This document shows, in pieces, positions 1,705-60,209 of a stretch of 64,000 bases of DNA. The number at the start of each line of letters is the position of its first letter. Positions within the stretch are counted from its first letter, which is position 1. This DNA is from Octopus sinensis (taxonomy: Eukaryota), in the NCBI RefSeq assembly GCF_006345805.1, contig NC_043002.1, forward strand, positions 82,088,001-82,152,000, in the 5' to 3' direction. Both the position numbers and the translations under genes were made by a program. Under the pieces are notes generated by a model that was not told the origin of the DNA, did not search any database, and saw only the letters and a program-made list of their open reading frames with translations.

Positions 1705-2067
1705 CATGCATGTGTGTGTTTGTACATAGTTTGATGTGTATTTTGCATCTTATAGCAGTTCACTGACTATAGGCTCCATCCTCTCATTAGCATAATGGCC
1801 TGGTCAGAATTAGTCTAATTTGGTGAAATTACTGCTCCTTATGTTGGTGGTCCCTCCTGCTTACTGACCTGTTAACTTTTCTTTTAGTTAATAATTACTA
1901 GGATAATATGCTGGGTTGGGGTTTGTGAATCAATTTGTCTCTCTTGTTTTCTCTTTCTTTCTCTAGCTCTCCTACTACCCTCTCTCTTTCTTCCCTTCTC
2001 TGTTAATGCATACAATTGACCCCGTTTAATACCCCCCACCCCCGTGAAGGTAATATTAATAATAATA

Positions 2068-2282
2068 ATCCTTTCTACTAAAGGCACAAGGCTTGAAATT
2101 TGAGGGAAGGGGACTAGTTGATTATATCAACACCAGTGTTTCCACTGGTACTTAATTTATTGACCCCGAAAGGATGAAAGGCGAAGTCAACCTTGGCAGA
2201 ATTTGAACTCAGAATGTAAAGATTGGTGAAATGCCACTAAGCATTTTACCCAGCATGCTAACAATTCTGCCAGCTCACCACC

Positions 2283-2284
<2 letters not shown>
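2068..2284 (-). mobile_element. SINE-A, near full length
   Basis: Reverse strand gives head gagctggcagaattgttagc, B-box-like gagttcaaattc, the conserved core and a tail ending agtagaaaggattatt. Confidence 0.85.

Positions 2285-2332
<48 letters not shown>
2284..2332. repeat. (AAT)n microsatellite between two SINE-A copies
   Basis: Direct reading. Confidence 0.95.
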
Positions 2333-2337
<5 letters not shown>

Positions 2338-2338
<1 letters not shown>

Positions 2339-2551
2339 CCTTTCTATTAAAGGTACAAGGCCTGAAATTTTGGGAGAGGGAACTAGTTGATTACATTGAC
2401 CCCAGTGTTTCACTGGTATTTAATTTATTGATCCTGAAAAGTTTGAAAAGCAAAGTCAACCTTGGTGGAATTTGAACTCAAAATGTTAGGAGGGATGAAA
2501 TGTTGCTAAGCATTTTGCCCGGCATGATAATGATTCTACCAGCTCACTGCT
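2338..2551 (-). mobile_element. SINE-A, near full length (tandem with the previous copy)
   Basis: Colinear similarity to 2068-2284. Confidence 0.85.
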
Positions 2552-5615: not shown

Positions 5616-5960
5616 CATTTGATCACTTGACTTTCTAGAAATCATAGCCAAATTTTCCTTCAAATCACACATTGCTATCTTAAAAATAAAAATGAAAGTG
5701 CTTGTTGAATAAAGTATCTTATATATGATAGCTGATAAAAATGGGTTGGTTGTGGCTGGAATAACATTTGATCACATGACTTTCTAGAAATCATAGCCAA
5801 ATCTACCTTGAATCATGTGTTGCTTTCTTGAAAATAAAAATGAAAGTGTTCACTGGATAAAGTATCTTATATTTGATGACTGATAAAAATGGGTTGGTTG
5901 TGACTGGAATGCCTTTGATCATAGCTCTGCTCCAAAAAAGGCTGACCTGGGGCTGAACAA
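5616..5960 (+). mobile_element. Family C repeat with internal ~148-bp tandem duplication
   Basis: The unit catttgatcac..gactttctagaaatcatagccaaat starts at 5616 and 5765. The element ends ggctgacctggggctgaacaa. Confidence 0.75.
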
Positions 5961-8881: not shown

Positions 8882-9263
8882 GGTGGAGGCATGACTGTGT
8901 GGTAAGAGCCTGGCTTCCTAACCACATGGTTCTGGGTTCAGTCCTACTGCATAGCACCTTGGGTAGCCTCAGGCCAACCAAAGCCTTGTGAGTGGATTTG
9001 GTAGATGGAAACTGAAAGAAGCCCATTGTGTGTGTGTAAATAAGAGTAATCTACACAGTGTGTGTATATGTCTTTGTCCCCTCATTACCACTTCACAACC
9101 AGTGTTGGTGTGTTTACGTCCCCTGTAACTTAGCAGTATGGCAAAATAGACTGAAAGAATAAGTGCTAGGCTCAAGAAATAAGTCCTGGAGACAATTTGT
9201 CCAACTAAAACCTTTCAAAGTGGTGCTCCAGCATGGGCCACAGTCAAATGACTGGAACAAAAA
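8882..9263 (+). mobile_element. SINE-B full length
   Basis: A-box-like tgactgtgtgg, B-box-like ggttcagtcc, central (TG)n, and 3' end gctccagcatgggccacagtcaaatgactgga. Confidence 0.85.
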
Positions 9264-9304
9264 TATGTATGTATGTATGTAATATGTATGGCTATTAAAA
9301 TTCA

Positions 9305-9535
9305 CAACAGAACATGTGGAAAGGTGTGCCTCTCAGTTGGCGGTCTAAAAAGACATGTTAAGGGAGTGCATATGGTGGCACTTGTTTCTCCTGCCTGCCA
9401 GCACAGTTGTCTAGTATGTAATAAAATGTGTAAAAGCTTGGCTGGGCTTAAAAGTCATATAAGGGCATCACATGGCAACAATCATGAATCATTTCAGCAA
9501 TGGCTTTTCTTGTGTAACGAGGATGCAGCTGCGAT
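9305..9535 (+). pseudogene. Tandem C2H2 zinc-finger fragment, probably the 3' end of an RTE-clade LINE ORF2
   Basis: TCGKVCLSVGGLKRHVKGVH (first Cys lost) and CLVCNKMCKSLAGLKSHIRASH (C-x2-C-x12-H-x4-H, 9408-9473), followed within about 60 nt by a (TA)n tail. Confidence 0.7.
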
Positions 9536-11173
9536 ATATATATATATATATATATAATATATATATATATATAATATATATATATATACACACACACCAC
9601 TACCATAGCGTTTGCCCTTTTCTTACCCCTGTCTTTCTTTTCTCTCTATCAACCTCCAAAGATCAAACAATAACCTAGCTTAGCTCATCTACTTTTCTTT
9701 ATAGTAGTTCACGTGCAAACAAGATTTAACAGAGTATATCAAGAAAAATGTTTGTAAATTCTTTTCTATCATAGGGTAATTGTTTCTGGCTAGAGAATTA
9801 TTTATTAATTTTTCCAGTACAACCTGTTGTTGTTCTCTCAACTATAAGATGAAAGATTTATCCTCTCCTGACAGACATTTCCAACTGATTTGGTAACCAA
9901 ATAACTTTAACATTAAATAATCAGATAAAAAAAAAAACAACCTCTTATCTATTCAAAGAGGGGGCAATTTTTTCTTCTTTTTCATTTTGTGCTTTTTTCT
10001 TTTTCTTTTTTTTTTTATAAATTTTAACTGTAATTTATCATCTTTAATTTACCAATACCTTTATCAACGCCAAATAATCTCCAAAAAATCAAATAAGGAA
10101 ATTTGTTAACCGATATCAATTTTGGGGGGGAAATATATTCTGTATTTTTTCTTTTTCTTTTTTTTAATGTTTTGCTTTTTATTCATTTTTTACTTACTCT
10201 CTTTCTAATTTCTACTATGAGTCATTAAAGTCATTATTCGGATAAAAATAATAATGATAATAATAATAATACTGTATCTATCCATAAATGTATCTAGTAA
10301 TTATATTTTATCACCAGACTAGGAAATGGGTCATTGATTAGAATGTTTTCATTAAAATTTTCAATCTGATTGGTTGTATATTTATGTTCTTGGTGAATGG
10401 CAAAACAGAATTTCTATATACACTCTTCACTTCATTCTATAGGAAAACAAAATCAGAAAACAGCAGTTTTTCTATTTGTATTTTTACTCAATTTCCTGGC
10501 CTTTGTTAATTGCCTCATTGTTTCATTTATATTATCCTCACACACAATATATGTTATTTAACAACCAATAATGTGTTGTCATGTTCTCAGTTGTATCATT
10601 CTGGATGTTTTTCTTTCATTCAAAAGTGTTGACTAGTTAAAGAATTCTATACTTAAGTATGGTACTTGCAGACAGTTTTACTTGATTGGTATGTTTTCTT
10701 TAAAATAGAACGAAATATTTCTATTGACAACATATATTATCCATTGAGATTGTGGTGCCATGTTTGTTTATGTTTATAGGTTCTACATTTTGTGTCTAGT
10801 TTCTTACCCAGATGCCATAAATGGTATTCAAATTCAGAATTAGAGATGTTCATGTTTTAGCAATATAACTTATGTATGTATGTAGTTGTAATTGAAATTA
10901 AAATTTGTAGTTGAAATTGAAGGTTGTAGATTTTGGTTTCATAGGAACTTCTTGGAATCGAAACTCTGCAGCCAATTTACCTCATCTATTGTTAGCTATT
11001 ACGTCTTTTCTGGAATTCAACAGTAACGCCTCATCAAGGAAACCTGCATGCTCTGCTATTTTAATAATTTTACCCATGCTTTTTGGTGGAACCAACAAAA
11101 ATAGTATAAAGCTATAAATGAATTTAGTTCTTGAGGAAACATTGTAGTATCATCAAAATTGTAAGAAAAAGGT

Positions 11174-13193: not shown

Positions 13194-14921
13194 CCCAAAA
13201 CATGTATGTTACTACAGTGTCTCTATGTATGACTCCAGCAAGAATTGAGCACTCAAAATATTGCATACATCCATATGCATATAATTTGGTTCCTTCAGCA
13301 AGTCACAAAATATTTGAAAGTAAATATGTAAATTGATTGGGTTGTTGGCAATCAGTAGTTTTTAACTTTCTAAGAGAACCATATGATCAGCACTGCCTGA
13401 TGAGTTGGGAGGCAAAACTCAGTTGCATTAGTGAAGTTCCAATTTCTATTACAGCTCATATATTGCTTTATACTTCATATTGAGTATTTTTTCCTCGTGT
13501 TTGTGTGCATTAACGTACAGTCACTCATTTCACACACACACACACATGCACATGTGTGCATACACACCACTACACATAGGTTGCATGGAAAATTTCACCT
13601 GATTTTGATAAAAAAAAATTAGTAACCAATCATAAGTTAAGTAAATTATGAAAATCAAATATTCCCTATGAGTTTTAAAGCAAAAATAATGAATTAATTA
13701 ATTATTAATTTATCAAAATTGGTGGACCTTTCTGCACACTTCAAACACACATACACACACACACACAGATACAGATACACAAACTCACACATACACGAGA
13801 ATGGTTTGTGTGTGTGTGTGTGTATTAAAAAAATCATTTTCACAAGCCAAGGTATTAATTTAATGTTTCCATCTTTCACATAACTCCCAAGTTTAAAATT
13901 GTCTCTAAAAGTTACACATGATTCATATCTATTTATTCATGTATGACAAATTCTTTTTTTGTTTTTGCTAAAAGGGATTTTATTTAATTTTTTTTTCTTT
14001 TAAATTTAACTATAGTAATAAGTATTATACATACAATAAATCAAAATCTTAACTGTTCATATTTGTTGCTATATTCCAAAATAATATTATTTCTGTGTGA
14101 ATTTTTCTCTCAATTTTTGCAATTCGTAAAAATAAGCACATACAAGCATAAAACATATTTTCTCTATGTAATATTTGTATTTCTTCAGTAATATATTTAT
14201 TAGAAACCTAAGAGTGTGAGCTAAACTTTTGATTTTGATTTCATTTTTTATGAGCCTTTTCATGTATAAACTCATACACTTAACTTTCTTATAAATAATA
14301 AAAAACAGAAGAAAAAAAGGGAGATAAGAAAAAGGAAAATTGGAGAAAATATATAGAGATATTATGTATAGAGAGATAAAAAGAAGGAAAAAAACAGTAC
14401 CCTGTATAGATATATGTTTAAAATATTTATAAAATTCCTGTTTGTCGTCCCAAGTTCTCCTTGTGTTTCCTTTCTTTACTCCTTTGAATATGTATGTGCC
14501 ATATATACATACATGCATATATATATCTATGCATGTACACATCTGTGCAGATATGTGTGTGTGTGTGCATGTATATATATATATATATATATATATATTA
14601 ATATTATAAATAGCATGCATGCATGTACACACATATTTGAGGGAATAAGAGCAAGAGAGACGGTGAAGGCTTGAAACAAAGAAGAGGAATCATAAATGTG
14701 TGTGTGTGTCTATATATATATAAATATATATATATATGTTAATGAATGAGTGACTGTGCAATAATGCATACAAACTCCAGAAAAATGTACTGTATTTAAG
14801 GTTTAGTGTTGTATAAAATTTAATCGCAGGTAAAAGTTTGCAAGCTTGACTCTGAGTTTTACTTTTATTTTAAGCTACTACCAAAAAGTTTAAATATTTT
14901 AAATCTATATGTATGTATGTG

Positions 14922-14960
<39 letters not shown>

Positions 14961-15137
14961 GCATACATATATATATATATGCATACATATATATGTATAT
15001 GCATACATCATTATATGTACACAACTTTGTACAGAGGCAGTATTATACATAGCTAGTGTGGTTTTTATCTCAGATGTGGTTATTACAAGTCGGAAACTAA
15101 GATTTCAGATATATATGTACATTTATATGTCTGCACA

Positions 15138-15194
<57 letters not shown>

Positions 15195-15696
15195 ACATCA
15201 GTTTTACATAAATATAAATTCAATGTGTGTAGGTCTTTATAAATTCAAAAATGTATGTGTGTGCTCCAAAGACTAGATAGTTTAACATGTGGACACAGCT
15301 CTGCCATATGTTATCCAATTTCAGCATTCCTATAGTTTGAATGAGAAACGGGATGATGTTGCCTCTAAGGATTTGAACAATGATTACGTAAGTACATTCT
15401 CAAACATTCCAATAAATAAAGATTATTATTTGTGATGAGTATAACAAACTGGTCGACAGAGTAACAGCCTGCCTGAATAGATGTTATTTGGTGTCTTTCT
15501 GAAGTTTTTGAACAATAGCTTCAACAACAAACATAAGCAACATAAATCCTTGTTTTTAATATATATATATATATATATGAAATAAGTAATAATAAAAATA
15601 TTAAAATGAATAATGATAAATAATTTGTTAAAGCCCCTGCATAATAAAAGTATTTTTTTTATGTGACATTACTAAAGATAATGGTTTAAAAGAAGA

Positions 15697-15801
<105 letters not shown>

Positions 15802-16163
15802 GGAAAATAATAAATCATGTTTTTATCATGGTGGTAAATGAAAAATCATTTAGTGTATTTGTTAAACTGTGTTGTACAGCTATTGTTGTTTCAATTCATT
15901 CTTTGATTGCCTAAACCACTTGTGTGTGTGTGTGTGTTGTTTTTTCTCCTTTTTTTTTTTGTCATTATTTGTACCACAATCCCTGCCTCTTCTTACCTAT
16001 TTTTCACGTTCTTCCCCACTCCCTCTCATTGTTGTGATCTATCCTATCTTGAGCCTTCTTTTGCATGTACTGAACCTGAGCTCAAAGCTTGGTCATTCTA
16101 CCAACCTTCTTTTTTTTTCTCTCTTGAGGTTTACCGGTTTCATCACAATTGCATCTACAGGTC

Positions 16164-25841: not shown

Positions 25842-26043
25842 TAATACTTTCTACTATAGGCACAAGGTGTGAAATTTTGGGGAAGGGGGTGAGTTGATCA
25901 CATTAACCCTTGTGCTCATTGACCCCAAAAGAACAAAAAGCAGAGTCAACCTCAGTGAAATTTGAATTCAGAACGTAAAGGTGAAAGACAGGCTGCTAAG
26001 CATTTTGTCCAGCATGCCAACAATTCTATCAGCTTAGTACCTT
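25842..26043 (-). mobile_element. SINE-A
   Basis: Colinear with 2068-2284. Confidence 0.8.
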
Positions 26044-26072
26044 AATAATAATAATATTAATAATAATAATAA

Positions 26073-26276
26073 TTTCAAATTTTGCCACAAGGGCAGCAAT
26101 TTGAGGGAGGAGATGAGTCAATGACATTGACCCCAGTTGGTACTTATTTTATCAATCCTGAAGGGATGAAAGGCAAAGTTGACCTCAGCAGAATTTGAAC
26201 TCAAAACGTAAAGCTGGACAAAAGACTGCCAAGCATTTTGCCCAGCATGCTAACAATTCTGCCAACTCACCACCTC
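26073..26276 (-). mobile_element. SINE-A (tandem)
   Basis: Colinear with the other copies; (AAT)n on both sides. Confidence 0.85.
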
Positions 26277-26309
26277 AATAATAATTATAATAATAATATG
26301 GGTAGTGGA

Positions 26310-30075: not shown

Positions 30076-30260
30076 AGATTCTTTGTATTTGATTTCAAGT
30101 CCTACTGAAGTCTGGTTTCTCCATCATCCCTTCATGGTTGATAACATAAAGTACTAGCGAAAGTACTTTGCCAGGGGTCAATGACATTGACTGAACTCCT
30201 TCTCTGAAAATTACTGGTCTTGTGACCAAATTAGAAACAAATATTATTATTTGCTACTTA

Positions 30261-30666
30261 GGTGCAGGAGTGACTGTGTGGTAAGTAGCTTGCTTGTGAA
30301 CCACATGGTTCCGAGTTCAGTCCCACTGCATGGCACCTTGGGCAAGTGTCTTCTACTATAGCCTTGGGCCGACCAAAGCCTTGTGAGTGGATTTGGTAGA
30401 CGGAAACTGAAAGAAGCCCGTCGTATGTATGTATGTATATATATGAAAGTGTGTGTATATATGTTTGTGTGTCTGTGTTTGTCCCTCCCCAACATCGTTT
30501 GACAACCGATGCTGGTGTGTTTATATCCCCGTAACTTAGCAGTTCAGCAAAAGAGACCAATAGAATAAGTACTAGGCTTACAAAGAATAAGTCCTGGAGT
30601 TGATTTGCTCAACTAAAGGCAGTGCTCCAGCATGGCCACAGTTAAATGACTGAAACGAGTAAAAGA
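30261..30666 (+). mobile_element. SINE-B full length
   Basis: Complete head, microsatellite and 3' half. Confidence 0.9.
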
Positions 30667-33875: not shown

Positions 33876-33969
33876 CTTACTATGCACACACTACAATCAA
33901 ATGACTGAAACGAAAAAAATAAAAGGTGATAAGCTGGCAGAATCATTTGTGCACTGAACAATATGCATT

Positions 33970-34062
33970 CTTTTATTTGTTTCAGCCATTTGATTGTGGC
34001 CTTGCTGGAGCGCCACCTTTAGTTGAAGAACTCAACCCCAGGATTTATTCTTTGTGACCCTA
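33970..34062 (-). mobile_element. SINE-B 3' fragment
   Basis: gtttcagccatttgattgtggccttgctggagcgcc. Confidence 0.7.
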
Positions 34063-34067
34063 GTCAT

Positions 34068-34330
34068 TTGACTGGATTTGGTAGATGGAAACTGAAAAAT
34101 GCCCACCATACATATATATGTGTGTGTTTGTTTGTTTGTTTGTGTTTATCCCCCCACCATCGCTTGACAACTGTTGTTGGTGTGCTTACATCCCCGTAAC
34201 TTAGCAGTTTGGCAAAATAGACCGATAGAATAAATACTAGGCTTACAAAAAAATAAGCTCTGAGGGCAATTTGTTTGACTAAAAGCGGTGCTCCAGCATG
34301 GCCACAGTCAAATAACTGGAATGAATAAAA
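34068..34330 (+). mobile_element. 5'-truncated SINE-B
   Basis: ggatttggtagatggaaactg...ggtgctccagcatggccacagtcaaa. Confidence 0.8.
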
Positions 34331-34457
34331 ACAAAATGGACCTTGATTCAGATCTACTGATACAAATCTTTGATATGGATAAAGTAAGTACCAAATCCTA
34401 AATTCAAAGAAATTAGTGATGGTTTGTGTTAGCTAAGAATTTGAAAGTCTGGTTTGA

Positions 34458-34564
34458 AGAATGTCAGCAAGTTCAGTTGTGATGAGTGAAAAGTCTAAAG
34501 TGCAGGTTCTAAGAACCTGCACTTTAGACTTTGCACTCACCACAACTGAACTTGCTGACATTCT
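34458..34564. repeat. 107-bp near-perfect palindrome (52-bp arms, 3-nt centre)
   Basis: 50 of 52 arm positions are complementary; centre TAA at 34510-34512. Confidence 0.97.
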
Positions 34565-34913
34565 GGGTAGTAGTTGCTCCCTCCCCCACTGGAGGGGTAT
34601 TGTGAACTCACAAAGTGTCAGCAATATGAAGAGGGTACTATAGGGTGTACTGGGCAGTTTTGTTTTTTAACTGCTCTGATGATGGATTCACTCACTAAAG
34701 GCTGATCTGGGGGTTAGATGACTCCAACAACAATGACAACAATACTGGGAAAGATAGAAAGAAGTGATGATGAGGTTAACTTTGTTTCACCTGTAACCAA
34801 CAGATTGCAACAAGAGAAACAGAATTGGGCCATTGGGTGATATGTGAAGAAGGTGGGCCTTTGAATACCTCTAATGAAGCAATATTATTAATGTTAATAT
34901 TATTTTGTTATTT

Positions 34914-35126
34914 AAGTTGGCAAGCTGGCAGAACCGTTAGCACACCAGGCTTGGCAGCATTTTTGTCCATCATAATGTTCTCAGTTCAAATTCCACTGAG
35001 GTCAGCTTTGCCTTTCATCCTTTCAGGGTCGATAAATTAAGTACCAGTTGCATACTGGGTTTGATCTAATCAACTGGCCCCCTTCCCCAAAATTCCAGGC
35101 CTTGTGCCTAGAGTAGAAAAGATCAT

Positions 35127-35127
<1 letters not shown>
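34914..35127 (+). mobile_element. SINE-A full length
   Basis: Head, core and tail, followed by (AGT)n. Confidence 0.9.
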
Positions 35128-35165
<38 letters not shown>

Positions 35166-35399
35166 CAGCAGCAGTAGTTGTAGTTTTTCTTCCATTAAGT
35201 TTTTTTTTCCCCATTTCTTACTGAGTGTCTTCCTGATACCTAGGGCAAAGAAACTCACTGTATACATTAATAGGCCATTGAAATAGATGCACCAGATTGT
35301 TCATTTACAAAATCAAATAAAGTTACTACTCTTATTAATGCTGCTGCTATGTGGACAATACATACTACAAGCCATCTTAGAGCTTCAACAGTCCCACTT

Positions 35400-40156: not shown

Positions 40157-40665
40157 TATCAAGTCATTAAGAATGAAATGTCTGATTTTGAACTGAAAGC
40201 TTATTTTACTTTTATCTCAACAAAAAGCAATGCAGTTAATCAAAGTATGTACCTAAATTATCAACACAATTTTGCCGTTTTATTGGTTGCTTATTTAAGC
40301 TGGCAGCGAAGAATTCTGGAGAACAAGTGGTGATGAAATCACAAAAGGTTGTTTCTGCATCTTCTTCAGATTTGAAGTCTTTTCCTTGCAAAAAGTTGTC
40401 TAGTACCTGGAAAACATGATAGTCAGTTGGTGCAAGGTCTGGTGAATATGGTGGATGACAGAGTACTACCAAGTTCAGTTTCTGTAACTTGAGTAGCATT
40501 CTTTGTGCAACATGTGGTCAAGCATTGTCTTGCAAGAGAATTGACCTGTCTCTATTGACCAATCTCGGCTCTTTAACTGCAAGTTCACTCATCATTTTAT
40601 CCAATAGGTTGATATATACATCCACTGAATTAACTTACAATTGTGCTTGTTTTTCCTGATTTGGA
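40157..40665 (-). mobile_element. Mariner (Hsmar1/cecropia-like) DNA transposon, 3' portion with TIR
   Basis: Transposase C-terminus followed by a TA-flanked TIR-like end (TA-tcaagtcattaagaatgaaatgtctgatttt) at 40157-40189. Confidence 0.85.
40236..40610 (-). pseudogene. Mariner D34D transposase pseudogene fragment
   Basis: ...PRLVNRDRSILLQDNA*PHVAQRMLLKLQKLNLVVLCHPPYSPDLAPTDYHVF...GTYFD. The two catalytic Asp are 34 residues apart, with an in-frame TGA at 40520-40518. Confidence 0.92.
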
Positions 40666-42351: not shown

Positions 42352-42742
42352 ACTCTCTCTTTTACTTGTTTCAGTCATTTGACTGCGACCATGCTGGTGC
42401 ACCGCCTTTAGTCGAGCAACTCGACCCCGGGACTTATTCTTTGTAAGCCCAGTACTTATTCTATCGGTCTCTTTTGCAAACCGCTCAGTGACGGAGACAT
42501 AAACACACCAGCATCGGTTGTCAAGCAATGCTACGGGGACAAACACACACACATACACATATATATATACACATATATACGACAGGCTTCTTTCAGTTTC
42601 CGTCTACCAAATCCACTCACAAGGCATTGGTCAGCCCACGGCTATAGCAGAAGACACTTGCCCAAGATGCCACGCAGTGGGACTGAACCCAGAACCATGT
42701 GGTTGGTTAGCAAGCTACTTACCACACAGCCACTCCTGCGCC
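42352..42742 (-). mobile_element. SINE-B full length, young-looking (head-to-tail with the previous copy)
   Basis: Near identity to 11692-12110. Confidence 0.9.
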
Positions 42743-50630: not shown

Positions 50631-51010
50631 CACTGAAGCTATATAATATTAATTGTAGATAATGATCAGAAAATTGAATATAATTGTTTGTCATTAGTAA
50701 ATAACGCTGCTTGAAACTGTTTATACTTTTGATTGTGTATCTGTGTGTGTGGTTTCTCTGCTAACCTCTTTTGGAAGCAAAATAAATAAATAAAGAAAAC
50801 TATACAAGCTGTCAGAATGACATGGTTTGTATTTATATAGAATTAATCAGCCAGGGTTTGTTTCTTTACTTGTTATTAACAGAGCGTGACATGTAGTATG
50901 TAACAATTAGAAGATATCTCCACAGGTGTTCTTATTTCATTAATTACATTAATTATTTTACAGGTCGTTTGTCAGCCTTCAACAACAGAAACAACAACAA
51001 TAACAATAAT

Positions 51011-51225
51011 GCTTTCTACTGAAGGCACAAGGCCTTGAAATTTGGAGGGAGGGGGACTAGTCGATTACATCAACCCTAGTGCGTAACTGGTACTTAATTT
51101 ATCAACCCCGAAAGGATGAAAGGCAAAGTCGACCTTGGCGAAATTGAACTCAGAATGTGGCAGCAGATGAAATACTGCTAAGCACTTTGCCCTCCGTGCT
51201 AACGATTCTGCCAGCTTAGCACCTT
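51011..51225 (-). mobile_element. SINE-A full length, CpG-rich
   Basis: Intact core aaggatgaaaggcaaagtcgacc. Confidence 0.9.
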
Positions 51226-52264
51226 AATAATAATATAAAAAACAAGAGCAATGACTTGAGATTTTGTCGTTATGCAAATTAGTTTTATCCTACACTTCAC
51301 AAATTACCTTTTTGCATTTGTTTTGTAAGATTCTTCATTTGAAATGGTGCATCAAACCAGATGTTGTTTTTATCTTGGGAGGGTCATTTTGCTTATAAAG
51401 AATCACACGCACTGATTCTATTATACTTTATTATTATTGTTGTTGTTATTATTATTATTACTATTTGTCAACTAGATAACCAGTCAAATGATTGATTTCT
51501 TGATTAAGATCAGCACTTGGACTAACGAGGACATGTCATTGATGAGGTTGCAAATATCGGTGAAAGGGTTCTGACAAACCAACTGATTAACTGATTGATT
51601 GAACATTTAATCAGGCAATCTATTAGTTAATTGGTTAACTAGTTGATGACGACAACAACAACAACAACAACAAAAACTACTACTGCCACTAATAATAATA
51701 ATGATAATAATAAAAGAAGGGAAATACAACCACTATGTGTGTTTCTTTTTGACAAAATGAACTTTCAAAGATAAAAAAGTTTTACAAATTATTCTGTAAG
51801 ATAACCAAGATCATTGTAGCATCACTGCTTTGCCAATATTTTCATTTAGCATGATACTGTCCATTCAAACATGTCTTCTTATCGTAGGTGTTGAATTAAT
51901 TAAATTCAGGCTTGGGATCGATGTTTCGGTATTATGTTGGCAGACTCAGTAGAGCGATAGACAAAAATGCTTTGCGATATTCATTTGTATAGCTTTGTGT
52001 TGTAAGTTTAAACTCTGCCAAAAATCAACTTCATTTTTTTTTTTTTTTTTTTTTTATTCTTTCACTCTTTTTCACTGATGGTAAAATAAGGATCAGTTGA
52101 ATATGGAAAGGTTGCTCCAATCTATTATAGCACTTCTCAAAAACAGTTGCCCATGCTGAGATATCTTGTCCACAGACAAACAAACAAGCAAACACGACTG
52201 AAAACAATACATCTGCCTTCGTTAGGGCGGAAGTAATAATAATTACAATAGGGCTTTTAATATA

Positions 52265-59826: not shown

Positions 59827-60209
59827 GGTGCAGGAATGTCTGTGTGGTAAGTAGCTTGCTTACCAACCACATGGTTCCGGGTTCAGTCCCACTGTGTGGC
59901 ACCTTGGGCAAGTGTCTTCTACAATAGCCTTGGACCGACCAAAGCCTTGTGAGTGGATTTGGTAGACGGAAACTGAAAGAAGCCCGTCATATATATGTAT
60001 ATATGTGTGTGTGCGTGTCTGTGTCTGTCCCCCTATCATCGCTTGACAACTAATGCTGGTGTGTTTACATCCCCATAACTTAGCAGTTCAGCAAAAGAGA
60101 CTGATAGAATAAGTACTAGGCTTAAAAAGAATAAATCCTATGGTCGATTTGCTTGACTAAAGGCAGTGCTCCAGCATGGCCGCAGTCAAATGACTGAAAC
60201 AAGTAAAAG
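59827..60209 (+). mobile_element. SINE-B full length
   Basis: Complete head and 3' half. Confidence 0.9.

What the first reader, a model, noticed from the sequence alone, without database searches (positions are those of the whole stretch)
34458..34564. Isolated 107-bp near-perfect palindrome of unique sequence
Seen: 52-bp arms of complex sequence (agaatgtcagcaagttcagttgtgatgagtgaaaagtctaaagtgcaggttc) around TAA. The only mismatches are A34482-C34540 and A34489-G34533. The ends are abrupt with no TSD, and no in-window family matches it. The centre TTCTAAGAA fits the STAT/GAS consensus TTCNNNGAA, and the 9-mer tgtcagcaa recurs at 34616-34624. The two mismatches argue against a pure assembly fold-back artefact. 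Established: such palindromes extrude cruciforms, are usually unstable, and as RNA are Dicer/ADAR substrates, with A-C mismatches being favoured editing sites. Inference: a hairpin-RNA/endo-siRNA locus, a palindromic MITE, or a template-switch scar.
Basis: partly seen in the sequence, partly recalled or inferred. Interest (0 to 1): 0.7.

Follow-up and report, generated by a model that had tools for sequence, protein, structure and literature searches.

The report
Lone 107-bp palindrome in octopod DNA
A real, single-copy 107-bp near-perfect palindrome sits in non-coding DNA of an octopus-like genome; it is most likely a young scar of DNA-replication template switching, with no evidence of function.

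Summary
Positions 34458-34564 form a 107-bp palindrome with 52-bp arms around TAA and exactly two mismatches (34482/34540 and 34489/34533). It is the only complex-sequence palindrome in the 64-kb window and is far beyond chance.

The window is non-coding, SINE-rich cephalopod (octopod) DNA. The palindrome lies in a 552-bp stretch that is unique in the window, between two old SINE copies. It has no target-site duplication, no second copy in the window, no Rfam family at threshold and no protein-family signal. The GAS-like centre and the recurring 9-mer are at chance level.

Best reading (about 0.55): a short inverted duplication made in one step by a replication template switch or fold-back. 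Arm divergence puts it at roughly 5 million years, younger than the flanking SINEs, and it is probably neutral.

If it is transcribed, it would form a 52-bp dsRNA hairpin. In a mollusc that points to ADAR editing or miRNA-type Dicer processing, not endo-siRNA, because molluscs lack DICER2 and siAGO.

A palindromic MITE, a functional hairpin-RNA gene and an assembly artefact remain possible. No cephalopod genome, read set or small-RNA data could be searched, so origin and expression are untested. Interest is low to moderate.

The parts
34458..34509 (.). Left arm of the palindrome (52 nt)
   Evidence: (I2). It pairs with 34513-34564 except at 34482 and 34489.
34510..34512 (.). Centre/loop TAA. 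The symmetry axis is at A34511. T34510 and A34512 are complementary but cannot pair in a hairpin.
34513..34564 (.). Right arm of the palindrome (52 nt)
34482..34482 (.). Mismatch 1: A34482 opposite C34540. It is A-C on the plus-strand RNA and G-U on the minus-strand RNA.
34489..34489 (.). Mismatch 2: A34489 opposite G34533. It is A-G on the plus strand and C-U on the minus strand.
34331..34882 (.). 552-bp stretch with no other copy in the window; it holds the palindrome.
   Evidence: Self-BLAST of the window. The flanks and arms are not related to the SINE-A consensus, apart from a marginal 16-mer at 34378-34393.
34056..34330 (.). Old SINE-B copy that bounds the unique stretch on the left (68-81% identical to other copies in the window)
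34883..35184 (+). Old SINE-A copy with a (TAG)n tail that bounds the unique stretch on the right (68-76% identical to other copies)

Best explanation
The palindrome is a lineage-specific short inverted duplication in unique non-coding DNA of an octopod cephalopod. The proposed mechanism is a single template-switch (fold-back) event during DNA replication or repair. The nascent strand left its template at about 34511, perhaps helped by the small natural inverted repeat TTC-TAA-GAA. It copied roughly 52 nt of itself or of the sister strand backwards, then returned to the original template. That leaves an inverted copy directly next to its source, with abrupt symmetric ends and no target-site duplication.

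Two later point substitutions, one transition and one transversion, produced the two mismatches.

With the Octopus vulgaris repeat clock the event is about 5 million years old (roughly 1-20), which is younger than the flanking SINEs.

It is probably selectively neutral. Whether it is transcribed is unknown. If it is, either strand would fold into a 52-bp dsRNA hairpin. In a mollusc that hairpin would be a substrate for ADAR editing or for miRNA-type Dicer processing, not for a canonical endo-siRNA pathway.

Shown here: the structure, its uniqueness in the window, the absence of a TSD, the repeat context and the taxon. Inferred: the template-switch origin, the age, neutrality and any RNA fate.
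For: - The structure is exact and non-random.
- It is the only complex palindrome in 64 kb.
- There is no other copy of an arm in the window.
- There is no TSD and the ends are abrupt.
- The arms and flanks are not derived from the local SINE families.
- It lies in a unique stretch between SINE copies that are only 68-81% identical to their relatives, whereas the arms are 96% identical, so it is younger than its surroundings.
- Template switching is documented to create perfectly paired hairpins in one event, from sequence with no pre-existing similarity, with inverted fragments of 15 to about 83 nt (PMC10710096).
- Age: d = 2/52 gives JC 0.039, or 0.020 per arm. Divided by about 0.0036 per My (JC 0.065 = 18 My, 0.2 = 56 My; PMC13282606), this gives about 5.5 My.
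- No Rfam family reaches its gathering score, and there is no Pfam signal in the ORFs that cross it.
- The taxon is octopod.
Against: - No orthologous or ancestral sequence could be examined, so the defining test of a template switch was not run. That test is a parent sequence with one arm only.
- Genome-wide copy number is unknown, and a low-copy palindromic element would look the same within one window.
- A spacer-less palindrome of this length is expected to be somewhat unstable. Survival for millions of years could instead hint at selection, or at a more recent origin with sequencing errors.
- The age rests on two substitutions and on a clock borrowed from another species.
Confidence: 0.55

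Rival explanations
1. It is a member of a palindromic MITE or foldback-type DNA transposon family whose other copies lie outside this window. The whole element would consist of two terminal inverted repeats.
For: The size (107 bp) and the full-length inverted-repeat architecture fit short MITEs. Octopus genomes carry TIR elements and annotated MITEs (PMC13282606). A mariner-like remnant lies in the window at 40239-40517. The symmetric abrupt ends are also what a MITE predicts.
Against: There is no target-site duplication of any length. The ends carry no TA, TTAA or other self-complementary TSD. No second copy or fragment exists in 64 kb of very repeat-rich DNA, where the SINE families recur dozens of times. 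The arm sequence was absent from the metagenome and viral contig collections, though these are not expected to hold cephalopod DNA.
Confidence: 0.2
2. It is a functional hairpin-RNA gene: a young miRNA-like or other small-RNA precursor, or a dedicated ADAR substrate, whatever its mutational origin.
For: Both strands fold into a very stable 52-bp hairpin (-91 and -93.9 kcal/mol, z about -14 to -16). Template-switch hairpins are a documented source of new miRNAs (PMC10710096). Coleoid cephalopods gained many new miRNA families, and their A-to-I editing is concentrated in hairpins of introns and 3'UTRs (PMC9699675). Sub-threshold hits to miRNA covariance models reflect only the hairpin shape.
Against: No evidence of transcription is available. 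The geometry is wrong for canonical Drosha/Dicer processing, which prefers a stem of about 35 bp and an apical loop of at least 10 nt (PMC10710096); here the stem is 52 bp and the loop 3 nt. No Rfam family reaches threshold: best 28 bits against a gathering score of 66. Molluscs lack DICER2 and siAGO and show no endo-siRNA signature (PMC11114477). The flanking sequence does not extend or frame the stem. The two arm differences are not compensatory.
Confidence: 0.1
3. It is an assembly or sequencing artefact: a chimeric fold-back molecule or a polishing error fixed in the consensus.
For: Fold-back chimeras occur in several library types. The locus could not be checked against reads.
Against: Both flanks are different unique sequences, so this is not a read that turns back on itself. 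A consensus needs the same 53-nt inverted insertion in most reads. The two arms differ at two positions.
Confidence: 0.07
4. It is a palindromic protein-binding site, for example a STAT/GAS element centred on TTCTAAGAA.
For: The centre matches TTCNNNGAA.
Against: The motif occurs 16 times in the window against 20.4 expected by chance. Dimeric binding sites span 10-20 bp, not 107 bp. Any palindrome with this centre would match.
Confidence: 0.01

Closest known systems
Template-switch mutation (TSM) hairpins, as in Loytynoja and Goldman's four-point model and the TSM-born primate miRNA loci (PMC10710096)
   Same: An inverted copy lies directly beside its source. Pairing is perfect at birth. The sequence is single-copy, with no TSD and abrupt ends. 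The copied length is within the reported range. The location is non-coding.
   Different: No parent sequence was available, so the event is inferred and not reconstructed. The loop is only 3 nt and the stem 52 bp, longer and tighter than the miRNA-yielding cases. The lineage is a cephalopod, where such events have not been catalogued to my knowledge.
Miniature inverted-repeat transposable elements / foldback elements
   Same: Short length, near-perfect inverted arms that make up the whole unit, and symmetric ends.
   Different: No TSD, no characteristic terminal motif, and no other copy in a repeat-rich 64-kb window.
Animal pre-/pri-miRNA hairpins
   Same: A stable stem-loop with a few internal mismatches, on either strand.
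   Different: The stem is about 17 bp too long and the loop too small. There is no family match at Rfam thresholds. Expression and conservation are unknown.
Drosophila-type hpRNA (endo-siRNA) loci
   Same: A long, almost perfect intramolecular duplex.
   Different: hpRNA stems are typically several hundred bp (my knowledge). The required DICER2/AGO2-type machinery is reported lost in Mollusca (PMC11114477).
Inverted-repeat ADAR substrates (for example inverted Alu pairs in primates, intronic/3'UTR hairpins in octopus)
   Same: It would form a perfect dsRNA over 50 bp long if transcribed. Cephalopods edit such structures heavily.
   Different: Those substrates are usually pairs of dispersed repeats separated by a loop, not a spacer-less palindrome of unique sequence. 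Editing here is untested.

Membership tests
Template-switch mutation product | A parent (outgroup or ancestral) sequence carries one arm only, and the child is explained by one inverted copy of adjacent sequence | not testable with these tools
   No cephalopod genome collection was available. The protein-based and DNA-pattern routes returned nothing.
Template-switch mutation product | The inverted fragment is adjacent to its source, at least 15 nt long, single-locus, and without a TSD | tested here: met
   52-53 nt arms separated by 1-3 nt, no TSD, and no other copy in the window. The range 15-83 nt comes from PMC10710096.
MITE / foldback transposon | Target-site duplication flanking the terminal inverted repeats | tested here: not met
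   The flanks GGTTTGA | GGGTAGT share no direct repeat. The palindrome ends AGAA...TTCT contain no self-complementary TSD such as TA or TTAA.
MITE / foldback transposon | Multiple dispersed copies in the genome | tested here: inconclusive
   There are no copies in the 64-kb window. The rest of the genome could not be searched.
Canonical animal miRNA precursor | Stem of about 35 bp with an unstructured apical loop of at least 10 nt | tested here: not met
   The stem is 52 bp and the loop 3 nt. The criterion is as stated in PMC10710096.
Canonical animal miRNA precursor | Match to a curated miRNA family, or small-RNA reads of about 22 nt with a 2-nt overhang | tested here: inconclusive
   There is no Rfam hit at gathering score: best is mir-1289 at 28.4 bits against 66. 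The supplement of PMC9699675 holds no precursor sequences, so its negative result is uninformative.
hpRNA / endo-siRNA locus | The host has the DICER2 / siRNA-Argonaute pathway and the locus yields 21-nt duplex siRNAs | tested here: inconclusive
   The literature reports the pathway as lost in Mollusca (PMC11114477), and the window is octopod. I did not search for DICER2 or siAGO in the source genome, and the locus's small RNAs were not testable.
STAT/GAS binding element | TTCNNNGAA enriched or positioned beyond chance | tested here: not met
   16 matches against 20.4 expected.

The most novel reading that the evidence does not exclude
The palindrome is a newly born, template-switch-generated hairpin RNA locus in an octopod. 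It would be transcribed from a host intron or a non-coding RNA and either heavily A-to-I edited or cut by the miRNA-type Dicer into small RNAs. That would make it a snapshot of de novo regulatory-RNA birth in the lineage known for miRNA expansion and extreme RNA editing.
Probability: 0.08. Interest if true: 0.55.

Novelty: new member of a known kind. Interest (0 to 1): 0.22.

Why it matters
If the template-switch reading is right, this is an ordinary by-product of replication, though a clean and unusually long and tight one, in a cephalopod genome. Such events have been studied mainly in primates, rodents and yeast.

It would matter more if the hairpin is transcribed. Cephalopods combine a large expansion of new miRNA families with the heaviest known A-to-I editing, and one-step palindrome birth is a plausible raw material for both. 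On the present evidence it is a curiosity with a cheap decisive test, not a discovery.

Tried and rejected
- **External copies through proteins.** ORFs run through the palindrome on both strands (60 and 63 aa). Neither is on record, and the 60-aa ORF has no word-sharing relative among 5.8 billion proteins. The collection holds almost no octopod ORFs (one search found 3 candidates for a very abundant SINE), so this says nothing about copy number.
- **Exact arm patterns in public collections.** A 21-mer and a 23-mer of the arm gave 0 hits in JGI metagenome contigs, and the 21-mer gave 0 hits in viral contigs. This is as expected and uninformative for a cephalopod.
- **Rfam.** There was nothing at gathering thresholds. 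The sub-threshold miRNA-model hits reflect generic hairpin shape.
- **Octopus miRNA paper supplements.** The arm strings were not found, but the files do not contain precursor sequences. I rejected this as a test.
- **Arms as part of a degraded SINE.** This would have told which arm is ancestral. Alignment to a SINE-A consensus built from window copies is at shuffle level for both arms and for the right flank. Only a 16-mer at 34378-34393 in the left flank is marginal.
- **Larger structured RNA around the hairpin.** Folding 34331-34882 on both strands adds nothing that extends the stem.
- **GAS motif and the 9-mer TGTCAGCAA.** Both are at chance level.
- **Coding potential.** No Pfam family matches the ORF across the palindrome.
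- **miR-17-type seed.** The match to AAAGUGC inside the arm is noted from memory. I rejected it as expected by chance given the hundreds of known seeds, and that family is vertebrate-specific.

Full report
**1. The observation.**
Reading 34200-34860, the repeat finder (pair I2) and a direct base-by-base check all give the same picture. Positions 34458-34564 are a 107-base sequence symmetric about A34511. As duplex DNA the arms are 53 nt with one base between them. As a folded single strand it is a 52-bp stem closed by a TAA loop.

Only two positions break the symmetry: A34482 opposite C34540, and A34489 opposite G34533. Outside the arms the next four position pairs are all non-complementary. 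The flanks ...GGTTTGA and GGGTAGT... share no direct repeat.

Fifty of 52 pairs in complex sequence has an expectation of the order of 1e-21 for the whole window (my calculation). The folding energies support this, with no shuffle as stable:

| Fold | Energy (kcal/mol) | z-score |
|---|---|---|
| RNA, plus strand | -91.0 | -14.2 |
| RNA, minus strand | -93.9 | -15.6 |
| DNA | -56.9 | -16.9 |

The minus-strand RNA is slightly more stable because the A-C mismatch becomes a G-U wobble. A scan of all centres and of all inverted repeats up to 300 bp apart shows that every other long close inverted repeat in the window is (AT)n microsatellite. This is the only palindrome of complex sequence.

**2. 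The side observations.**
TTCNNNGAA occurs 16 times in the window against 20.4 expected, so the GAS-like centre carries no information. The 9-mer TGTCAGCAA does recur at 34616-34624. However, a 9-mer shared with the palindrome appears in 8.8% of shuffled flanks and in 28 of 421 150-bp tiles elsewhere in the window. This is chance.

**3. What the window is.**
- GC content is 25-40%.
- There are no tRNA genes.
- No Rfam family reaches threshold.
- Microsatellites are abundant.
- No ORF looks like a real gene. The only protein-family traces are a weak DDE_3 (mariner-like) remnant at 40239-40517 and a C2H2 finger-like ORF at 9252-9554.
- Two short interspersed repeat families recur dozens of times.

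The translation of one of these SINE families has a single relative among 5.8 billion proteins, a hypothetical protein of the octopod Argonauta hians. The DNA of that locus shares the SINE core at up to 92% identity, but little else. I conclude that the window is non-coding DNA of an octopod cephalopod. It is probably not Argonauta itself, because these SINE families are far denser here than in the Argonauta locus. My recollection that these repeats look like Octopus SINEs is a lead from memory only.

**4. Local context.**
Self-comparison places the following features around the palindrome:
- a SINE-B copy at 34056-34330;
- an inverted SINE-B fragment at 33958-34064;
- a SINE-A copy with a (TAG)n tail at 34883-35184;
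- between them, 552 bp (34331-34882) with no other copy in the window. The palindrome sits in this stretch.

Neither arm nor the right flank aligns to a SINE-A consensus beyond shuffle level. Folding the whole 552 bp on either strand does not extend the stem.

The flanking SINE copies are 68-81% identical to their relatives, whereas the two arms are 96% identical. The palindrome is therefore much younger than its surroundings, unless its arms are being homogenised.

With d = 2/52 (JC 0.039, or 0.020 per arm) and the Octopus vulgaris repeat clock of about 0.0036 per My (PMC13282606), the age is about 5.5 My. The Poisson range is roughly 1-20 My. This is an inference that assumes neutrality and a borrowed clock.

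**5. Search for relatives.**
No cephalopod genome, read archive or small-RNA data set is reachable with these tools.
- ORFs through the palindrome are not on record and have no relatives.
- Exact 21- and 23-mers of the arm are absent from metagenome contigs, and the 21-mer from viral contigs.

These negatives are expected and do not bear on copy number. The supplement of the octopus miRNA paper does not contain the arm, but it holds no precursor sequences, so that is not a test either.

**6. Mechanism.**
Two models predict symmetric, abrupt ends: a palindromic mobile element, and an inverted copy of adjacent sequence.

The mobile-element model fails the one defining feature that could be tested, the target-site duplication. 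It also has no second copy in a window where true repeats recur many times.

The inverted-copy model is the documented outcome of replication template switching. That process creates fully paired hairpins in a single event, at loci without prior similarity, with inverted fragments of 15 to about 83 nt (PMC10710096). The small natural inverted repeat at the centre (TTC-TAA-GAA) is the kind of microhomology that could seed an intramolecular fold-back. This last step is my inference.

I therefore commit to a template-switch or fold-back origin followed by two point substitutions, at about 0.55.

**7. Function.**
Nothing here shows transcription.
- The geometry (52-bp stem, 3-nt loop) departs from the roughly 35-bp stem and loop of at least 10 nt preferred for miRNA processing (PMC10710096).
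- The sub-threshold hits to miRNA covariance models reflect hairpin shape only.
DICER2 and siRNA-type Argonautes are reported lost in Mollusca, and no endo-siRNA signature was seen in a mollusc library (PMC11114477).
- If the locus lies in a transcribed intron or UTR, the likeliest fate is A-to-I editing, which in octopus is concentrated in hairpins of introns and 3'UTRs (PMC9699675).

I rate a functional RNA gene at about 0.1.

**8. Artefact.**
A read that folds back on itself would make the flanks palindromic too, and they are not. The arms differ at two bases. An artefact remains possible (about 0.07) until reads are inspected.

**9. Verdict.**

This is a new instance of a known kind of mutation product, of low to moderate interest. 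The decisive tests are simple and are listed under next steps: a genome-wide BLAST of one arm, orthologous loci in related octopods, reads that span the locus, and RNA and small-RNA mapping.

Noticed in passing
window 33971-34053 and 34248-34330: Two SINE-B pieces lie in inverted orientation 194 nt apart (83 nt, 73% complementary), just upstream of the palindrome. This is the classic inverted-repeat-pair type of potential dsRNA/ADAR substrate (I1).
   Followed up: partly
window, many sites, e.g. 30250-30664, 42360-42619, 59937-60208; L001:10040-10152: A SINE family ('SINE-B', about 275 bp) recurs throughout the window at 68-83% identity. Its roughly 110-bp core is shared at 87-92% with an Argonauta hians locus, which suggests a conserved cephalopod SINE core.
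   Followed up: partly
window 2051-2547, 34883-35184, 26043-26299, 51005-51238 and others: A second SINE family ('SINE-A', about 270 bp) has a tRNA-like GGTTCAAATCC box and a trinucleotide tail (TAA/TAG/ATT)n. Two copies lie in tandem at 2051-2547.
   Followed up: partly
window 40239-40517 (-): A 93-aa ORF carries the ...HPPYSPDLAPTDYH... motif typical of mariner/Tc1 transposases. The Pfam DDE_3 hit is weak (E 0.029, below cut-off). It is probably a decayed DNA-transposon remnant.
   Followed up: partly
window 9252-9554 (+): A 101-aa ORF has two C2H2-type zinc-finger-like motifs (Pfam E about 1e-4, near the cut-offs). It sits next to an (AT)n array and SINE copies. It may be a fragment of a retroelement or of a zinc-finger gene.
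   Followed up: no
window 14900-15800: This is the most AT-rich part of the window (GC 0.25 for 14001-16000). Several (AT)n/(TATA)n arrays form long AT-only palindromes, the only other long close inverted repeats in the window.
   Followed up: no
window 5616-5921: A tandem duplication of a 148-bp unit, 2.1 copies at 85% identity, of unknown nature.
   Followed up: no
window 34579-34600: A short GC-rich hairpin (CCCTCCCCC ACTG GAGGGG) lies 15 nt downstream of the palindrome and appears in the plus-strand fold. It is probably incidental.
   Followed up: no
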